The notes beneath the pieces were generated by a model. That model did no database searches. It was not told the origin of the DNA and was given only the letters and a program-made list of their open reading frames with translations. Positions 8,912-42,886 of a stretch of 64,000 bases of DNA are shown piece after piece. Each line of letters opens with the position of its first letter. The stretch's first letter is position 1. The DNA lies in the IMG/VR virus record IMGVR_UViG_3300036766_000194, positions 1 through 64,000 of that record. One strand, 5' to 3'. The position numbers and the translations under genes are program-made.

Positions 8912-8920
8912 AAAGTTTTT

Positions 8921-9270
8921 GCTTCCTGAGGCCGAAAGGCTTTTGGAAGCTCAGTGAAACTTGATTCCCGTACCAGGATCCGCGTCTGGTGAGTTAATCT
9001 GTTCAAGGGAATCCCACTTTTAGTCAGGTGGAGAACGGATGAAGTTGGGGATGTAGTCTGATGTCGTAAGATGTTGGGGAACACCATCGGGGGAGGTACC
9101 GCAAGGTACTTCCCTCGGCCAAAACGAGATTACTATGAAGACGATCACCAACTCGAACCGTTTCACCAAAGGAACGGTAGGAGTGTTTACGGGGATCGTC
9201 GTCGTCACCTTCGGTGGCGAAGATACCAAGGGTATTGAGGGGTAATACCCTCGCTACCCGGACCTACCCA
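8921..9270 (+). ncRNA. Unassigned ~350-nt multi-hairpin RNA between tRNA-Ala and tRNA-Val
   Basis: Stems gcttcc/ggaagc, gattccc/gggaatc, gtac-cgcaag-gtac, gacgatc/gatcgtc, cacc-ttc-ggtg, gggtatt/aataccc. No credible ORF. Confidence 0.55.
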
Positions 9271-9286
9271 AACAAATTTAACGCAT

Positions 9287-9362
9287 TAGCCTGTTAGCTC
9301 ATCGGTCAGAGCGTCCGGTTTACACCCGGAATAGGGGGGTTCAATTCCCTCACGGGCTACCA
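9287..9362 (+). tRNA. tRNA-Val(TAC)
   Basis: tccgg-tttacac-ccgga arm, CCA end. Confidence 0.93.
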
Positions 9363-9400
9363 AGTTTTTGGAGTTTACTGTGGTTTAGTTTAGAAAGGAG

Positions 9401-9436
9401 TAAACTGGGGTAAACTGGGATAAACTGGAGTAAACT
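9401..9436 (+). repeat. Four TAAACT units at 10-bp period
   Basis: taaactgggg taaactggga taaactggag taaact. Confidence 0.9.
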
Positions 9437-9479
9437 CAGTAGCTTGAGCAGGTATGGCGGTACCAAGTTTTTAGAGTTT

Positions 9480-38481: not shown

Positions 38482-38553
38482 ATAGTGTTCCTACCAAGAA
38501 GGAAATAGTTAGAATTTTAGCTAAAAATGTAGACTATCCAGTATAGTATAGAT

Positions 38554-38616
38554 ATGAGATACATGCGACCAAATTCGCCGTGCCCCAGTTTGCTGGGCAT
38601 CTATACCACCGATTAA
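38554..38616 (+). CDS. Putative leaderless 20-aa leader peptide ahead of the tRNA-Pro cluster
   Basis: ATG 14 nt after AGTATAGT. MRYMRPNSPCPSLLGIYTTD. Confidence 0.3.
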   Translation: MRYMRPNSPCPSLLGIYTTD

Positions 38617-38702
38617 CGCGGTATAGACACCCAGCGAGCCATCGTTTGGGTGTGTAGAAGTTCTTTCCGAGTAATAACCCCATACGATAATTAAGCGTCA
38701 CA

Positions 38703-38776
38703 CGGAGTGTACGTGGACGGACGACGGCAGGCGTCGGAAGCCTGAGCACCCGGTTCAATTCCGGGCACTCCGACCA
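38703..38776 (+). tRNA. tRNA-Pro(CGG)
   Basis: cggagtg/cactccg acceptor, caggc-gtcggaa-gcctg arm, CCA. Confidence 0.88.
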
Positions 38777-38782
38777 ATTTTT

Positions 38783-38861
38783 CGGGAAGTAGCGCAGCCT
38801 GGTCCAACGCGCCTGCTTTGGAAGCAGGAGGTCGTGGGTTCAAATCCCACCTTCCCGACCA
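38783..38861 (+). tRNA. tRNA-Pro(TGG)
   Basis: cctgc-tttggaa-gcagg arm, CCA. Confidence 0.95.
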
Positions 38862-38875
38862 AGTTTTTAGTTTTA

Positions 38876-38949
38876 CGGGGACAAGTGTTAAGGCCGCATA
38901 TATGCTTTGGGAGCATAGGGTCGGAGTTCAATTCTCCGGTCCCCGACCA
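38876..38949 (+). tRNA. tRNA-Pro(TGG), second divergent copy
   Basis: tatgc-tttggga-gcata arm, CCA. Confidence 0.88.
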
Positions 38950-39327
38950 GGAGCCGGAAGCCGTTGAAGAGTAAGCCTTGTAGAAGGCAACGGCAGGCTC
39001 CTCGTAATTTCTGTAGGGAGCAGCCGCCGTAAGGCGGAGGACGAGGCTGCAGTTGAAAGAGCCGTGGGGAAAGAGTGCCATTATCCTAACCCGTAAGGGA
39101 AGGACCTAAGTCCTGAGGGGAGCGTGGGTGAAACGCCTCCTGCTCACAGATTTTCGTTGTGGAAGATGCAGACCCCAACTTAATGGGGAGTCGGATTCGC
39201 ACAAGGAAAGATTCGGTCTAGTAGCCAAGTCTAACCGACCCAGGCGGATTTGCCGATAAACGGAGGAGCAGCTTTCCTGGAGCCTAGTGTTCCGTTGGAA
39301 GGTAAGACTTCACCGAACGCAACGGAA
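38950..39327 (+). ncRNA. Unassigned ~380-nt multi-domain structured RNA
   Basis: Consecutive closed domains: ggagcc/ggctcc, gcagcc/ggctgc, ttgtg/cacaa, ggaaag/ctttcc, ttccgttg/caacggaa. GNRA loops. Confidence 0.6.
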
Positions 39328-39331
39328 GTTT

Positions 39332-39409
39332 CGGGGACGTAGCGAAGCCTGTTATCGCGCACCCTTGGGGTGGGTGAGATCGCTGGTTAAAATCCAGTCG
39401 TCCCGACCA
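39332..39409 (+). tRNA. tRNA-Pro(GGG)
   Basis: caccc-ttggggt-gggtg arm, T-loop TTAAAAT, CCA. Confidence 0.9.
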
Positions 39410-39418
39410 AACTTGTCT

Positions 39419-40021
39419 GTGATATATCAAGTTTACCCCAGTTTATGTGATTGTGGCCTAAACTGGGGTAAACTTCGTATAGCCTTTTATAAATACGATG
39501 GTAGCAATCTACGCTGGGAGTGGGCACCCAAACGTGGCTGGTACAAGTATGGTACCCGGACGCAACTTTTTAATGAGACTGATCCGTTGTTCGGTCAGGC
39601 TATTCCCATATTCCAAGATACCATGGGAGCGGAAATAGCTCGTCGTTGTAAGGATGCCGAACGCGGAGTACAGAGAATTATTGTTTATACGGAATTCTTT
39701 GGACCTTCTAGCTTCGCCGGAGAGCATGAATTGGCGGAACCAAAGAAATTGAAGTTGTTTGACATTAAGTTGTACAAACGTGGAATAATGTCTCCGCGAC
39801 AGTTCGTAAAAACTTTTGGAGATTTGCCTTATTCAGCGCAAGTGACTTATGAAGGCAACCTTAACAAGCAATTTATTGATGATGTTCGTAAGGGAGTCTA
39901 TCCCGTTTGGGAAGGAGTCGTAGCCAAGGGGGATGATTTTATAATAAAGATAAAAACGGACATATACTTTAAAAAATTGAATGAAGTTTACGGAACCGAG
40001 TATAGGAACTATTGGGAATGA
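39419..40021 (+). CDS. ATP-dependent RNA ligase-like nucleotidyltransferase
   Basis: KYDGSN motif I, TEFFG, FDIK, EGVVAK, KIK. GTG start chosen so that YPS leads. Confidence 0.75.
   Translation: MIYQVYPSLCDCGLNWGKLRIAFYKYDGSNLRWEWAPKRGWYKYGTRTQLFNETDPLFGQAIPIFQDTMGAEIARRCKDAERGVQRIIVYTEFFGPSSFAGEHELAEPKKLKLFDIKLYKRGIMSPRQFVKTFGDLPYSAQVTYEGNLNKQFIDDVRKGVYPVWEGVVAKGDDFIIKIKTDIYFKKLNEVYGTEYRNYWE
39429..39475. repeat. 17-bp perfect inverted repeat at the start of the ligase gene
   Basis: aagtttaccccagttta / taaactggggtaaactt. Confidence 0.9.
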
Positions 40022-40414: not shown

Positions 40415-40458
40415 AATTACAGGGTAGAATAAAAGAGCAGGAAAGAAGGAGAACATAG

Positions 40459-40611
40459 ATGCTCGTATTAAAAAGACCAATTAGGCCGTTGTGGCAGGCG
40501 CTGAGGTATCTAATTCCGCACCGTTTGACCATGTTTCATACGCCAACGATTTGGGCAATACTGTGGTGGAACTACTGGAATGAGCGAAAAGCTCTTTATC
40601 CACACAGTTAG
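40459..40611 (+). CDS. Small Trp-rich hypothetical protein (50 aa)
   Basis: RBS aaggag. Below the track cutoff. Confidence 0.5.
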   Translation: MLVLKRPIRPLWQALRYLIPHRLTMFHTPTIWAILWWNYWNERKALYPHS

Positions 40612-40655
40612 GGTTAGGGGAAGTTCAAGCTCAACTTGGACTTCCCGTATTAAAT

Positions 40656-40937
40656 TGCAGGGATAGGTATGGGGCGACAAAAGGGCAGCAAAACCATGCT
40701 GACTATAAATCGCCTGCCTTTTCGAGACGCCATAGCGCCTCGAAGGGAACCCAGCCTTTGATGGTTGGTCCTGCATGCGCACTTGAGCCGCTCTCCGGGA
40801 AGGCTCATGACGAAGAGAACTTCTTTCTTGAAGTTCTCTTCGACCCCGGTAAATTTTAAGGTGGCAGATCCGTCAAGATGTGAACGGCGACCGTTCCGGA
40901 TACTAATACCCAAAGGTCGAAAATCATGGGAGCCACC
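40656..40937 (+). ncRNA. Unassigned ~280-nt structured RNA
   Basis: tgcagg/cctgca, perfect 13-bp hairpin 40811-40842, ggtggc/gccacc. Preceded by CGTATTAA. Confidence 0.5.
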
Positions 40938-40944
40938 ATGAAAA

Positions 40945-41037
40945 TTGAACGTGCTGTGGTGTAATGGAGCACGCACGGTAGAATCCGTAATCCATCAGGG
41001 CTAAGAGGTCCCAGACGAGTCTGGGTAGCGCGTTCAA
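40945..41037 (+). ncRNA. tRNA-like RNA with an 11-bp closing stem
   Basis: ttgaacgtgct/agcgcgttcaa, D-arm-like gtggtgtaatggagcac, acgg/ccgt arm, cccaga/tctggg arm. Confidence 0.45.
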
Positions 41038-41067
41038 TACTTTTAAATAAAGAAATAGGAGACGACA

Positions 41068-41481
41068 GTGGCAAAAGCACAAAAATCGGCATTACCGAAG
41101 GGTGACAAGCCCGAGATTTCCAGAGAAGAGATGCTGCGTGTCGTCATTATGAACACGAAGCAGGGACTCTTTACCGGAAATGTTGACTATGTCAACGTTC
41201 TGGTGGAATCGTATGAAATGGAGAAGGATGCCGTCGCTACTCTTGCCCCGGCTTGTTCTGGACTGTTGAAGCGTGCCGAGACGGCGGAAGCAGAGGTTGC
41301 TTCTTTGAGGGAGGAAGTTCTCAACCTCCGTATGGAGGTCATGGGACTTCGGGCAGGTCTGAACAGCGGAATTGAAGCAGTCATGGAAAGGGTCGCTGCT
41401 CAAGAAGAGTCTCAGGACGGTATTGCAACTCCGGCTGGAGTAAGCGCATCGTTGAATGAGTGCGAAGCAACGGGATCTTGA
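41068..41481 (+). CDS. Coiled-coil hypothetical protein
   Basis: RBS aggag, GTG start. Confidence 0.7.
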   Translation: MAKAQKSALPKGDKPEISREEMLRVVIMNTKQGLFTGNVDYVNVLVESYEMEKDAVATLAPACSGLLKRAETAEAEVASLREEVLNLRMEVMGLRAGLNSGIEAVMERVAAQEESQDGIATPAGVSASLNECEATGS

Positions 41482-41517: not shown

Positions 41518-41891
41518 TGTGATGGACTGGACTGTCGCTGGCGACTGCTAGAATGAGTTGCGGGAGGAAGTTCGGGGCAGCATCAGAGCAACGTGCCAGG
41601 TAATAACTGGGCATCGGAGAAATCCGATGACGGAAAGTGGAACAGAAAATAACCGCCACGGCGCAAGCCGGGGTAAGGGTGCAAAGGTAGGGTAAGAGCC
41701 TACCAGCACGGCGGTAACGTCGTGGCTGCTAAACCCCACGTGCTGCAATGCCAAATAAGGATGGGATGATCTGCTCGATCGTTTTTCTCATCCGGGTAGG
41801 CAGCTTGAGATCATAGGTGACTATGATCCTAGACGAATGACAGTCACTCAGCATGGGCTGATGACAGAACCCCGGCTATAGGTTCATCACA
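41518..41891 (+). ncRNA. rnpB: RNase P RNA (bacterial type A-like)
   Basis: P1 tgtgatggac/gttcatcaca. P4 halves GAGGAAGTTCGGGG and ACAGAACCCCGGCTA. Also GAAAGTGGAACAGAAA, GGTAAGAGC, GCTAAACCC and AGACGAATG conserved segments. Confidence 0.93.
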
Positions 41892-41892
41892 A

Positions 41893-42036
41893 ATGAAAAA
41901 TAGTCACAAACGTGAGTCTAAACAATTGGGAATAAATGTCCAAACGGCAACCAATCGTTTGGTTAGAATGCTGCTGTTCAAATTCGCCCTCGAAACAAAG
42001 AGGGAGAATTGGAATAAATTCCCAACGATTTGCTGA
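41893..42036 (+). pseudogene. Truncated HNH endonuclease-type N-terminus
   Basis: SKQLGINVQTATNRLVRMLLFKF resembles the start of phage HNH genes. ORF stops at 47 aa before any HNH motif. Confidence 0.45.
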
Positions 42037-42188: not shown

Positions 42189-42299
42189 CGCGGGGTGGAG
42201 CAGCCAGGTAGCTCGTTTGCCTCACGGAGAGGAATCCTAACGGGTTTCTCTTCGACCATAAGCAAAAGGTCGTCCGTTCAAATCGGACCCCCGCACCCA
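42189..42299 (+). tRNA. Initiator-type tRNA-fMet(CAT) interrupted by a 34-nt insert in the anticodon loop
   Basis: cgcggggtggagcagccaggtagctcg 5' half with C1:A72 mismatch. Removing 42223-42256 restores tttgc-ctcataa-gcaaa. CCA end. Confidence 0.9.
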
Positions 42300-42493: not shown

Positions 42494-42886
42494 ATGATGA
42501 CACATGCCGACTACGAAGCGCAACGCGCACTGCTCTATGACGACTACGAGGCGCAATGCGCACCGCTTTATGCCGACCACAAGGCGCAACTCGCACTGCT
42601 CGATGACGACCACTACGAAGCGAAACACGCACTCGATGACGACTACGAGACGCAACTCGCACTGCTCGATGACGACTACAAGGCGCAACGCGCACTCGAT
42701 GACGACTACGAGACGCAACTCGCACTGCTCGATGACGACTACGAAGCGAAACACGCACTGCTCTATGACGACTACAAGGCGCAACGCGCACCGATCGATG
42801 CCGACTACGAAGCGAAACGCGCACTGCTCGATGACGACTACGAGGCGCAACGATCAGTAATCGAAAATCCGTTCAAAGTTTCATGA
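42494..42886 (+). CDS. Acidic 11-aa (33-bp) tandem-repeat protein
   Basis: RBS aaggag. About 11 units of DYEAQRALLDD with point variants and 10/12-aa indel units. Confidence 0.8.
   Translation: MMTHADYEAQRALLYDDYEAQCAPLYADHKAQLALLDDDHYEAKHALDDDYETQLALLDDDYKAQRALDDDYETQLALLDDDYEAKHALLYDDYKAQRAPIDADYEAKRALLDDDYEAQRSVIENPFKVS

What the first reader, a model, noticed from the sequence alone, without database searches (positions are those of the whole stretch)
38950..39327. ~380-nt multi-domain RNA wedged between proline tRNAs
Seen: starts at the base after the tRNA-Pro CCA and ends 4 nt before the next tRNA-Pro. It has five consecutively closed domains, GUAA tetraloop hairpins, a D-arm-like uaguagccaag and a T-arm-like gagcgugggugaaacgccuccugcuc. 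No credible ORF. It does not show group I, group II or tmRNA hallmarks by eye. Inference: a new large phage ncRNA excised by tRNA processing, comparable in context to GOLLD/ROOL.
Basis: partly seen in the sequence, partly recalled or inferred. Interest (0 to 1): 0.76.

Follow-up and report, generated by a model that had tools for sequence, protein, structure and literature searches.

The report
Structured spacer RNA between phage tRNAs
A 382-base non-coding stretch between two proline tRNA genes of a 300-kb sediment phage is most likely a real folded RNA released by tRNA processing, but only its last ~185 bases are conserved, in one other phage, and the closest relatives lack it, so it is a lineage-specific accessory RNA rather than a new widespread giant RNA.

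Summary
The stretch exists as described. It is 382 nt (38950-39331), ORF-free, on the tRNA strand, and starts at the base after the CCA of an odd tRNA-Pro(UGG). It runs up to C1 of tRNA-Pro(GGG). No Rfam family matches it, even at E<=10. It is GC-rich (0.55 against 0.434 for the genome) and folds moderately better than shuffles (z -2.7).

It is not one conserved multi-domain RNA. Only the 3' ~185 nt (39148-39331) has a homolog, a 172-nt inter-tRNA spacer in one syntenic metagenomic phage contig (L069):
- nhmmer E 4e-10.
- 61% identity, against 36% at four-fold sites of the adjacent RNA-ligase gene.
- 10 of 40 predicted pairs are compensatory.
- Each sequence folded alone gives the same three-arm fold, closed by a helix between the upstream tRNA's trailer and the downstream tRNA's leader.

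The 5' ~200 nt has no homolog. Its terminal hairpin duplicates the 3' end.

The closest relatives have their tRNA-Pro genes back to back, or carry unrelated filler or an HNH gene. The D-arm and T-arm resemblances are not supported.

Verdict: an orphan, accessory RNA embedded in a tRNA operon, of unknown function. A relative that carries RNase P RNA between two tRNAs is a precedent within this phage group.

The parts
38875..38949 (+). Upstream flank: non-canonical tRNA-Pro(UGG) ending in an encoded CCA. It is conserved in L069 and L078.
   Evidence: ARAGORN. Rfam tRNA 35.6 bits. 87% identical to L069 3076-3149. Alignment of tRNA-Pro genes.
38950..39001 (+). 5' hairpin starting at the base after the CCA. 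The outer helix is GGAGCC/GGCUCC and the inner helix is GCCGUU/AACGGC. It is a paralog of the 3' terminal region 39279-39331.
   Evidence: Pair probabilities >=0.96. Local alignment with the 3' end gives z 4.0, with 2 of 200 shuffles as good. Repeat D5 and inverted repeat I4. It is the only GC-rich, structured trailer directly after a CCA among the 46 tRNAs of the genome.
39002..39147 (+). Lineage-specific central part with short hairpins: GUAA-capped at 39024-39037 and 39090-39099, CUAA-capped at 39101-39114, and a 7-nt-loop hairpin around 39118-39140. No homolog was found and the overall fold is uncertain.
   Evidence: The 5' half alone (38950-39147) folds with z -1.87. nhmmer and Smith-Waterman searches found no homolog. 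There is no tRNA-like signal.
39148..39331 (+). Conserved 3' module, a closed three-arm RNA.
- P1, the closing helix: 39154-39161 with 39318-39325. It can extend to 39149-39161 with 39318-39330.
- P2: 39171-39177 with 39184-39192.
- P3: 39193-39200 with 39244-39251, enclosing hairpin 39205-39236.
- P4: 39261-39268 with 39308-39315, with a tip specific to this phage.
   Evidence: Homolog at L069 2900-3075: nhmmer E 4.3e-10 and Smith-Waterman z 10.4. RNAalifold predicts 40 pairs, all kept in both sequences, 10 with changes on both sides. Slid controls give 0-2. Independent MFE folds of the two sequences give the same architecture, z -3.09 and -3.77. Identity is 0.61, against 0.36 at four-fold sites of the neighbouring gene.
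39279..39331 (+). 3' terminal region holding the second copy of the duplicated hairpin (CCGUUG...CAACGG). Its CAACGG strand can pair either locally or in P1.
   Evidence: The motif (C/U)CGUUG..GAAG occurs three times within the element, at 38961, 39154 and 39292.
39332..39409 (+). Downstream flank: tRNA-Pro(GGG). RNase P cleavage at its 5' end would set the 3' end of the element.
   Evidence: ARAGORN and Rfam, 51.7 bits. A G-run indel at 39333 in other samples restores a perfect C1-G72 acceptor stem.
38545..38702 (+). Conserved operon leader upstream of the first tRNA-Pro. It probably holds the start of the transcription unit that includes the element.
   Evidence: Conserved blocks shared with L069, L075 and L089. 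The simple scan found no sigma-70 consensus promoter.

Best explanation
The element is an accessory, lineage-specific structured RNA embedded in the phage's tRNA-Pro operon.

**Shown**
- It is non-coding.
- Its 3' ~185 nt form a discrete three-arm domain. Sequence and base pairing of this domain are conserved in one other phage.
- The domain's closing helix is built from the trailer of the upstream tRNA and the leader of the downstream tRNA.
- The 5' ~200 nt are specific to this phage lineage and arose at least partly by duplication of the module's terminal hairpin.

**Inferred**
- It is transcribed with the four tRNA-Pro genes.
- RNase P cuts it free at the 5' end of tRNA-Pro(GGG). The phage carries its own RNase P RNA 2.2 kb downstream.
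- An endonucleolytic cut at or near the CCA of the upstream tRNA frees the other end. The excised fragment would then be protected from exonucleases by its terminal helices.

**Most likely role**
A dispensable stable RNA, or a processing-modulating spacer. The closing helix holds the downstream tRNA's leader and the upstream trailer in a duplex, which could set the order or efficiency of tRNA-Pro maturation. A trans-acting role for the excised RNA cannot be excluded.
For: - It lies on the same strand inside the tRNA-Pro array, starting right after a CCA and ending at the next tRNA.
- It has no ORF and no protein-family hit.
- GC is 0.55 against 0.434 for the genome, as in the tRNAs and the RNase P RNA.
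- The module is homologous to L069 2900-3075: E 4.3e-10 and z 10.4.
- All 40 predicted pairs are kept in both sequences and 10 are compensatory, against 0-2 in slid controls. Many G-U pairs make the fold specific to the + strand.
- Independent folds of the two sequences give the same architecture.
- Module identity is 0.61, against 0.36 at 50 four-fold degenerate sites of the adjacent ligase gene.
- The element is kept in three sediment samples with a single SNP.
- Precedent in the same phage group: relative G002 carries a bona fide RNase P RNA (208 bits) at 305811-306131, filling the gap between tRNA-Cys and tRNA-Gly.
- From general knowledge: phage T4 carries two stable RNAs of unknown function inside its tRNA cluster.
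Against: - Only one homolog was found, so covariation rests on two sequences, and the structure was derived from those same sequences.
- Syntenic relatives lack the element. L075 (ligase 84% identical) and L090 (77%) have adjacent tRNA-Pro genes. L089 and L078 have unrelated 107- and 244-nt fillers.
- In L069 the module sits in a different slot of the array.
- The 5' half has no homolog and folds only marginally better than shuffles (z -1.87).
- No RNA-seq run holding the sequence was listed, so neither transcription nor the RNA ends are shown.
- No promoter or terminator was identified by the simple scan.
Confidence: 0.55

Rival explanations
1. It is non-functional filler. tRNA arrays of these phages are highly plastic, and the element is a patchwork left by duplications, rearrangements and decay. 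Its hairpins would persist only because GC-rich duplicated sequence folds by itself.
For: - It is absent from the closest relatives, and each relative carries a different filler.
- Hairpin copies are duplicated within the element.
- The 5' half has no homolog and folds with z only -1.87.
- Whole-element z is only -2.7.
Against: - GC is 11 points above the genome average.
- Module identity of 0.61, against 0.36 at neutral-proxy sites, shows constraint.
- There are 10 compensatory pairs and the same independently predicted fold in both sequences.
Confidence: 0.25
2. It is a mobile element or its remnant, for example a non-autonomous insertion or a scar of a homing-endonuclease or intron cassette that targets slots between tRNA genes.
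For: - Its distribution among relatives is sporadic.
- The module occupies a different slot in L069, where the equivalent slot holds an HNH endonuclease gene.
- A GIY-YIG-like ORF fills another 377-nt tRNA slot in this genome.
- The two ends of the element carry imperfect direct repeats of ~50 nt.
Against: - The genome holds a single copy.
- No copy was found in three related phage records.
- Motif scans of IMG/VR and GTDB genomes gave only chance hits.
- No group I or group II intron or ribozyme family matches, even at E<=10.
- There is no ORF.
- Both flanking tRNAs are complete, so it is not an intron.
Confidence: 0.12
3. It is a new large multi-domain ncRNA class comparable to GOLLD/ROOL, conserved as a whole and acting as one particle.
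For: It sits next to tRNAs, has several GNRA-capped hairpins, and matches no known family.
Against: - The whole element was found only in this phage population.
- Only its 3' half is shared with a single other contig.
- The 5' half is not conserved.
- It has no relatives in 127-463 kb related phage records.
Confidence: 0.04
4. It is a set of decayed tRNA genes. The T-arm-like hairpin followed by CACAGAUUUU would be the relic of a T arm, an ACCA end and a U-rich trailer.
For: - In the MAFFT and nhmmer alignments, the stretch just upstream of the module lines up with the T arm and 3' end of L069 tRNA-Pro number 2.
- The motif AGAUUUU resembles the AGUUUU trailers that follow most tRNAs here.
Against: - There is no tRNA covariance-model hit at E<=10.
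- A tRNA-Pro profile gives no hit.
- Local alignments to tRNA-Pro genes plus trailers give z<=1.2.
Confidence: 0.04

Closest known systems
Stable RNAs of unknown function inside the phage T4 tRNA gene cluster (species 1 and 2; rnaC and rnaD). Cited from general knowledge, not retrieved here.
   Same: They are non-coding RNAs encoded among phage tRNA genes, co-transcribed with them and released by the tRNA-processing machinery. They are not essential and their function is unknown.
   Different: The present element is 382 nt and composite.
RNase P RNA embedded in a tRNA array of the related phage record G002 (305811-306131)
   Same: It belongs to the same phage group (RNA-ligase protein 74% identical). 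It is a ~320-nt structured RNA that fills the gap between two tRNA genes to within ~6 nt on each side, so it must be freed by tRNA processing.
   Different: That RNA is a recognised ribozyme (208 bits to RF00010). The present element has no RNase P signal at E<=10, and this genome already has its own RNase P RNA at 41519-41894.
GOLLD and ROOL large RNAs
   Same: They are large, structured, non-coding, often phage- or prophage-borne and often next to tRNA genes (general knowledge).
   Different: They are roughly 580-800 nt and widely conserved with strong covariation. No Rfam match to them was found here. The present element is smaller, and only ~185 nt of it is conserved, in one relative.
Functional spacers of bacterial tRNA operons, such as the 3'ETS of leuZ acting as an sRNA sponge in E. 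coli (general knowledge)
   Same: They are pieces of a tRNA precursor outside the tRNAs that survive processing and act in trans.
   Different: Those are short and largely unstructured, and they act by base pairing. No target complementarity was tested here.

Membership tests
GOLLD / ROOL (Rfam) | Match to the family covariance model | tested here: not met
   cmscan of all 4227 Rfam 15 families gave no hit at gathering score or at E<=10, including on the element alone.
GOLLD / ROOL (Rfam) | Location next to tRNA genes in a phage or prophage | tested here: met
   The element lies between two tRNA-Pro genes of a 299,875-bp phage record with direct terminal repeats.
Group I intron | It interrupts a gene whose exons join into an intact product, and it has the conserved P3-P8 core | tested here: not met
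   Both flanking tRNAs are complete cloverleaves. There is no Intron_gpI hit at E<=10.
tmRNA | tRNA-like domain plus a tag reading frame | tested here: not met
   ARAGORN calls none here but does call a permuted tmRNA at c234274-234654. There is no Rfam hit. The only similarity is a shared 14-mer hairpin.
Bacterial RNase P RNA | Match to the type A or type B model (P4 core) | tested here: not met
   There is no hit at E<=10. The genuine gene is at 41519-41894, at 255 bits. Smith-Waterman against it gives z -0.9.
tRNA or tRNA-like element (D arm, T arm) | Cloverleaf or T-arm signal in the tRNA covariance model or in a tRNA-Pro profile | tested here: not met
   No RF00005 hit inside the element at E<=10. 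The tRNA-Pro HMM gives no hit. Local alignments give z<=1.2.
Y RNA / YrlA | Partner Ro (TROVE) protein encoded in the genome, plus a match to the YrlA model | tested here: not met
   There is no TROVE domain in the genome and no YrlA hit in the element.
Stable RNA embedded in a phage tRNA operon (T4 species 1 and 2 kind) | Non-coding, on the same strand, between tRNA genes of one array | tested here: met
Stable RNA embedded in a phage tRNA operon (T4 species 1 and 2 kind) | Accumulates as a discrete processed RNA in infected cells | not testable with these tools
   No RNA run holding the sequence was listed. Only DNA metagenome contigs were available.
Conserved structured ncRNA (generic criterion) | Base pairs kept through compensatory changes in homologs | tested here: inconclusive
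   This is met for the 3' module but with two sequences only: 10 of 40 pairs are compensatory, against 0-2 in slid controls. There are no data for the 5' half.

The most novel reading that the evidence does not exclude
The conserved 185-nt three-arm module, and possibly the second orphan 376-nt RNA at 8912-9287, represent new classes of phage RNA. They would be produced by excision from tRNA arrays, like the array-embedded RNase P RNA of a relative. They would act in trans in the phage's own RNA-processing and translation toolkit (46 tRNAs, tmRNA, RNase P RNA, RNA ligase). Possible roles are a decoy or regulator for tRNA-targeting host defences, or a regulator of the phage RNase P or RNA ligase.
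Probability: 0.15. Interest if true: 0.7.

Novelty: new member of a known kind. Interest (0 to 1): 0.38.

Why it matters
Huge phages that carry near-complete tRNA sets, a tmRNA and even RNase P RNA are rebuilding parts of the host's RNA machinery. This locus shows that their tRNA arrays also hold orphan structured RNAs that tRNA processing would release. At least one ~185-nt module is under selection for its fold.

If such RNAs act in trans, tRNA arrays would be a general place to look for new phage ncRNAs.

The element's patchy distribution also argues that most of it is dispensable and evolves fast. That limits how much weight this single locus can carry.

Tried and rejected
**Searches that found nothing useful**
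- Rfam at gathering score and at E<=10: no family.
- BLAST against the phage collection: only the flanking tRNAs match.
- BLAST and nhmmer against three related phage records, 127-463 kb: nothing.
- Motif scans of IMG/VR with four patterns, and of GTDB genomes with one pattern: only chance hits in coding regions, all rejected by covariance model R1.
- Model R1 against the related records: only the two training sequences match.
- RNA-seq runs: none was listed.
- Contigs from three DNA runs: near-identical, with one SNP in the element, so not informative for covariation.

**Ideas tested and dropped**
- Relic-tRNA origin of the 5' half: not significant.
- Homology between this element and the second orphan RNA at 8912-9287: none.
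- Similarity of the L089 107-nt spacer, which I thought I saw by eye: not significant (z 0.9) and not found by R1.
- An HDV-like or theta-type ribozyme right after the CCA: rejected by inspection, because the hairpin between the P1-like strands is far too long. Rfam also gives no hit.
- Y RNA idea: there is no Ro protein in the genome.
- Retron idea: the gene immediately downstream is an RNA ligase, not a reverse transcriptase. The rest of the genome was not searched for one.
- Small ORF starting at the conserved AUGGGG: only 'MGS' is shared between the two sequences and there is no ribosome-binding site, so it was dropped.

**Could not be done**
- The contig of the closest unexamined relative (P0002, ligase 82% identical, with an 800-nt gene-free stretch upstream) could not be fetched.

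Full report
**What is there**

The window is the first 64 kb of a 299,875-bp IMG/VR virus record with direct terminal repeats. The whole genome carries 46 tRNA genes in several arrays and a permuted tmRNA. It also carries a bacterial type-A RNase P RNA at 41519-41894, at 255 bits.

One array holds four tRNA-Pro genes, at 38703-38776, 38783-38861, 38876-38949 and 39333-39409. The finding is the stretch between the third and the fourth. The third tRNA ends in an encoded CCA at 38949. The fourth begins at 39332 if the C1-G72 pair shared by these tRNA-Pro genes is counted. The element is therefore 38950-39331, 382 nt.

**Checking the observation**

- No credible ORF lies in it. The longest stop-free stretch on the + strand is 49 aa, and none of the stop-free stretches has a Pfam hit at E<=1.
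- No Rfam 15 family matches at gathering score or at E<=10, even when the element is searched alone.
- GC is 0.55 against 0.434 for the genome.
- The + strand folds to -143.3 kcal/mol, z -2.69. The - strand gives z -1.69.
- GNRA-capped hairpins are enriched: 4 against 0.95 expected, P about 0.01.
- It is the only trailer in the genome that is GC-rich and structured immediately after a CCA. The others are A/U-rich, typically AGUUUU.

Two parts of the description did not hold. The 'five closed domains' are not reproduced: the single-sequence fold is one 5' hairpin plus a large multibranch with long-range pairs, and these conflict with the helices supported by comparison. The D-arm and T-arm resemblances get no support from the tRNA covariance model, from a tRNA-Pro profile, or from shuffled-control alignments.

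**Relatives**

The gene just downstream (39413-40021) has the KxDG motif and matches the PHROG family 'RNA ligase'. It has 365 homologs, typically 199 aa long. I used it to fetch syntenic contigs.

- L074 is the same phage.
- L075 (ligase 84% identical) has four tRNA-Pro genes back to back with 0-4 nt between them and no such RNA.
- L090 (77%) also has adjacent tRNA-Pro genes.
- L089 (73%) has a 107-nt spacer before tRNA-Pro(GGG). It is not significantly similar.
- L078 (69%) has an unrelated 244-nt filler.
- The 463-kb record G002 has an unrelated 416-nt gap before its tRNA-Pro(GGG).
- L069 (78%) has the same leader, the same odd tRNA-Pro(UGG) and the same ligase. It carries an HNH endonuclease gene in the slot that the element occupies here, and a 172-nt spacer one slot upstream.

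**The conserved module**

The L069 spacer is homologous to the 3' half of the element: nhmmer E 4.3e-10 and Smith-Waterman z 10.4.

On the two-sequence alignment, RNAalifold predicts 40 pairs in four main helices. All are paired in both sequences, and 10 have changes on both sides. Sliding the partners by 1-3 columns leaves 0-2 such pairs and 33-46% pairing. The structure was derived from these same sequences, so this control is generous. However, each sequence folded on its own gives the same architecture, with z -3.09 and -3.77.

That architecture has four parts:
- A closing helix formed by the U-rich trailer of the upstream tRNA and the leader of the downstream tRNA.
- A small hairpin.
- A long-range helix enclosing a hairpin.
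- A third arm with a variable tip.

Identity in the module is 0.61. It is 0.36 at 50 four-fold degenerate sites of the adjacent ligase gene, and 0.73-0.87 for the flanking tRNAs. The module is therefore under constraint. The many G-U pairs tie the fold to the + strand.

**The rest of the element**

The 5' ~200 nt have no detectable homolog and fold only marginally better than shuffles (z -1.87). The 5' hairpin (38950-39001) is a diverged copy of the last ~50 nt of the element (z 4.0; repeats). The motif (C/U)CGUUG..GAAG, which forms the 5' strand of the closing helix, occurs three times within the element. The element therefore looks composite: a conserved module plus a lineage-specific extension built at least partly by local duplication.

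**Search for more copies**

None was found:
- in the genome itself;
- in three related phage records, by BLAST, nhmmer or covariance model R1;
- in the GenBank phage collection;
- in IMG/VR, by four motif patterns;
- in GTDB genomes, by one pattern, where all 31 hits were rejected by R1.

Three sediment metagenomes hold the element almost unchanged, with one SNP at 39115 and a G-run indel at the tRNA junction. That shows persistence in the population but says nothing about structure. No RNA run was listed.

**Interpretation**

The best reading is an accessory structured RNA of the tRNA-Pro operon. It would be co-transcribed with the tRNAs and cut out by RNase P at its 3' end and by a cut near the upstream CCA. 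Its conserved core is the 185-nt module. Co-transcription and excision are inferred, not shown.

A precedent exists within the same phage group. In G002, a bona fide RNase P RNA (208 bits) fills the gap between tRNA-Cys and tRNA-Gly almost to the base. So these phages do deliver functional RNAs by excision from tRNA arrays.

The function of the present RNA is unknown. The geometry suggests that the closing helix influences the order or efficiency of maturation of the neighbouring tRNAs. A trans-acting role is possible. Its absence from the closest relatives shows it is dispensable.

The rivals are:
- plain filler from array rearrangements, disfavoured by the GC content, the constraint and the covariation in the module;
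- a mobile element or its scar, suggested by the patchy distribution, the endonuclease genes in equivalent slots and the terminal repeats, but with no other copies and no intron or ribozyme signature;
- a GOLLD/ROOL-like large RNA, not supported;
- decayed tRNA genes, not significant.

**Verdict**

This is a real, probably functional but narrowly distributed orphan ncRNA candidate. It is a new member of the known kind 'stable RNAs embedded in phage tRNA operons'. It is of moderate interest in itself. Its context is more striking: a phage-encoded RNase P RNA, a tmRNA, a tRNA with a 34-nt insert in its anticodon loop, and a second orphan 376-nt RNA.

Noticed in passing
window 8912-9287: A second ORF-free, GC-rich (0.50) 376-nt stretch lies between tRNA-Ala and tRNA-Val. 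Its predicted structure is stronger than the target's (z -4.84), with long helices capped by GAAA, GUAA, GCAA and UUCG loops. It has no Rfam hit, no homolog, and no relation to the target.
   Followed up: partly
window 41519-41894; G002:C1:305811-306131: The phage encodes a bacterial type-A RNase P RNA (255 bits). A 463-kb relative has one (208 bits) wedged exactly between tRNA-Cys and tRNA-Gly. Two other related records gave no hit. The huge-phage survey I read (PMC7162821) mentions tmRNAs but not RNase P RNA.
   Followed up: partly
window 42189-42299: A tRNA gene carries a 34-nt insert, itself a 12-bp hairpin, in its anticodon loop. ARAGORN with introns allowed reads Val(CAC) with an intron at 37/38. 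Removing the insert one base earlier gives Met(CAU). It has a C1xA72 mismatch like an initiator tRNA. Contigs from other organisms match the 5' half at high depth and diverge at 42224. An insert this short is not a group I intron. An RNA ligase gene lies 2 kb upstream.
   Followed up: partly
G000:C1:234274-234654 (minus strand) and window 39089-39102: The permuted tmRNA gene shares an exact 14-mer, ACCCGUAAGGGAAG (a CCC-GUAA-GGG hairpin with its flanks), with the target element. These are the only two copies in the genome. It may be chance or a shared recognition hairpin.
   Followed up: partly
window 39333: There is a G-run length polymorphism at the junction of the element and tRNA-Pro(GGG). 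Two other samples and contig L074 lack one G, which gives a perfect C1-G72 acceptor stem. The window's version has an extra G.
   Followed up: no
window 9380-9440 and 39423-39481: The motif GTAAACTGGGG occurs in tandem between tRNA-Val and tRNA-Ile. It also forms the arms of a 23-bp hairpin that overlaps the start of the RNA ligase ORF. It may be a phage regulatory or terminator element.
   Followed up: no
G000:C1:126857-127233; L069 3128-3793: Homing-endonuclease-like genes occupy other inter-tRNA slots. In this genome a 377-nt slot between tRNA-Ser and tRNA-Ile holds a GIY-YIG-like ORF. In L069 an HNH ORF sits between tRNA-Pro(UGG) and tRNA-Pro(GGG).
   Followed up: no
window 38545-38702: The leader of the tRNA-Pro operon has blocks conserved in four phages (for example ATGCGACCA and a ~30-nt block ending in GGGTGTGTAG) and a hairpin whose sequence differs between phages. 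It may be a promoter plus a structured leader.
   Followed up: partly
window 38876-38949; L069 3076-3149; L078 294-367: A non-canonical tRNA-Pro(UGG) with an unusual D arm is conserved at 87% identity across three lineages, more than the canonical tRNA-Pro genes beside it. G002 has 90- and 93-nt tRNA-Pro genes with long extra arms.
   Followed up: no
window 40415-41067: About 650 nt have no convincing ORF, between a small ORF and the ORF at 41068. GC is about 0.5. The stretch was not examined beyond the Rfam gathering scan.
   Followed up: no
window 42494-42886: An ORF is made of tandem DDDYEAQ-like repeats just upstream of a tRNA-Met. Other samples show length variants there, including a 28-nt insertion and an 87-nt back-joint.
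   Followed up: no
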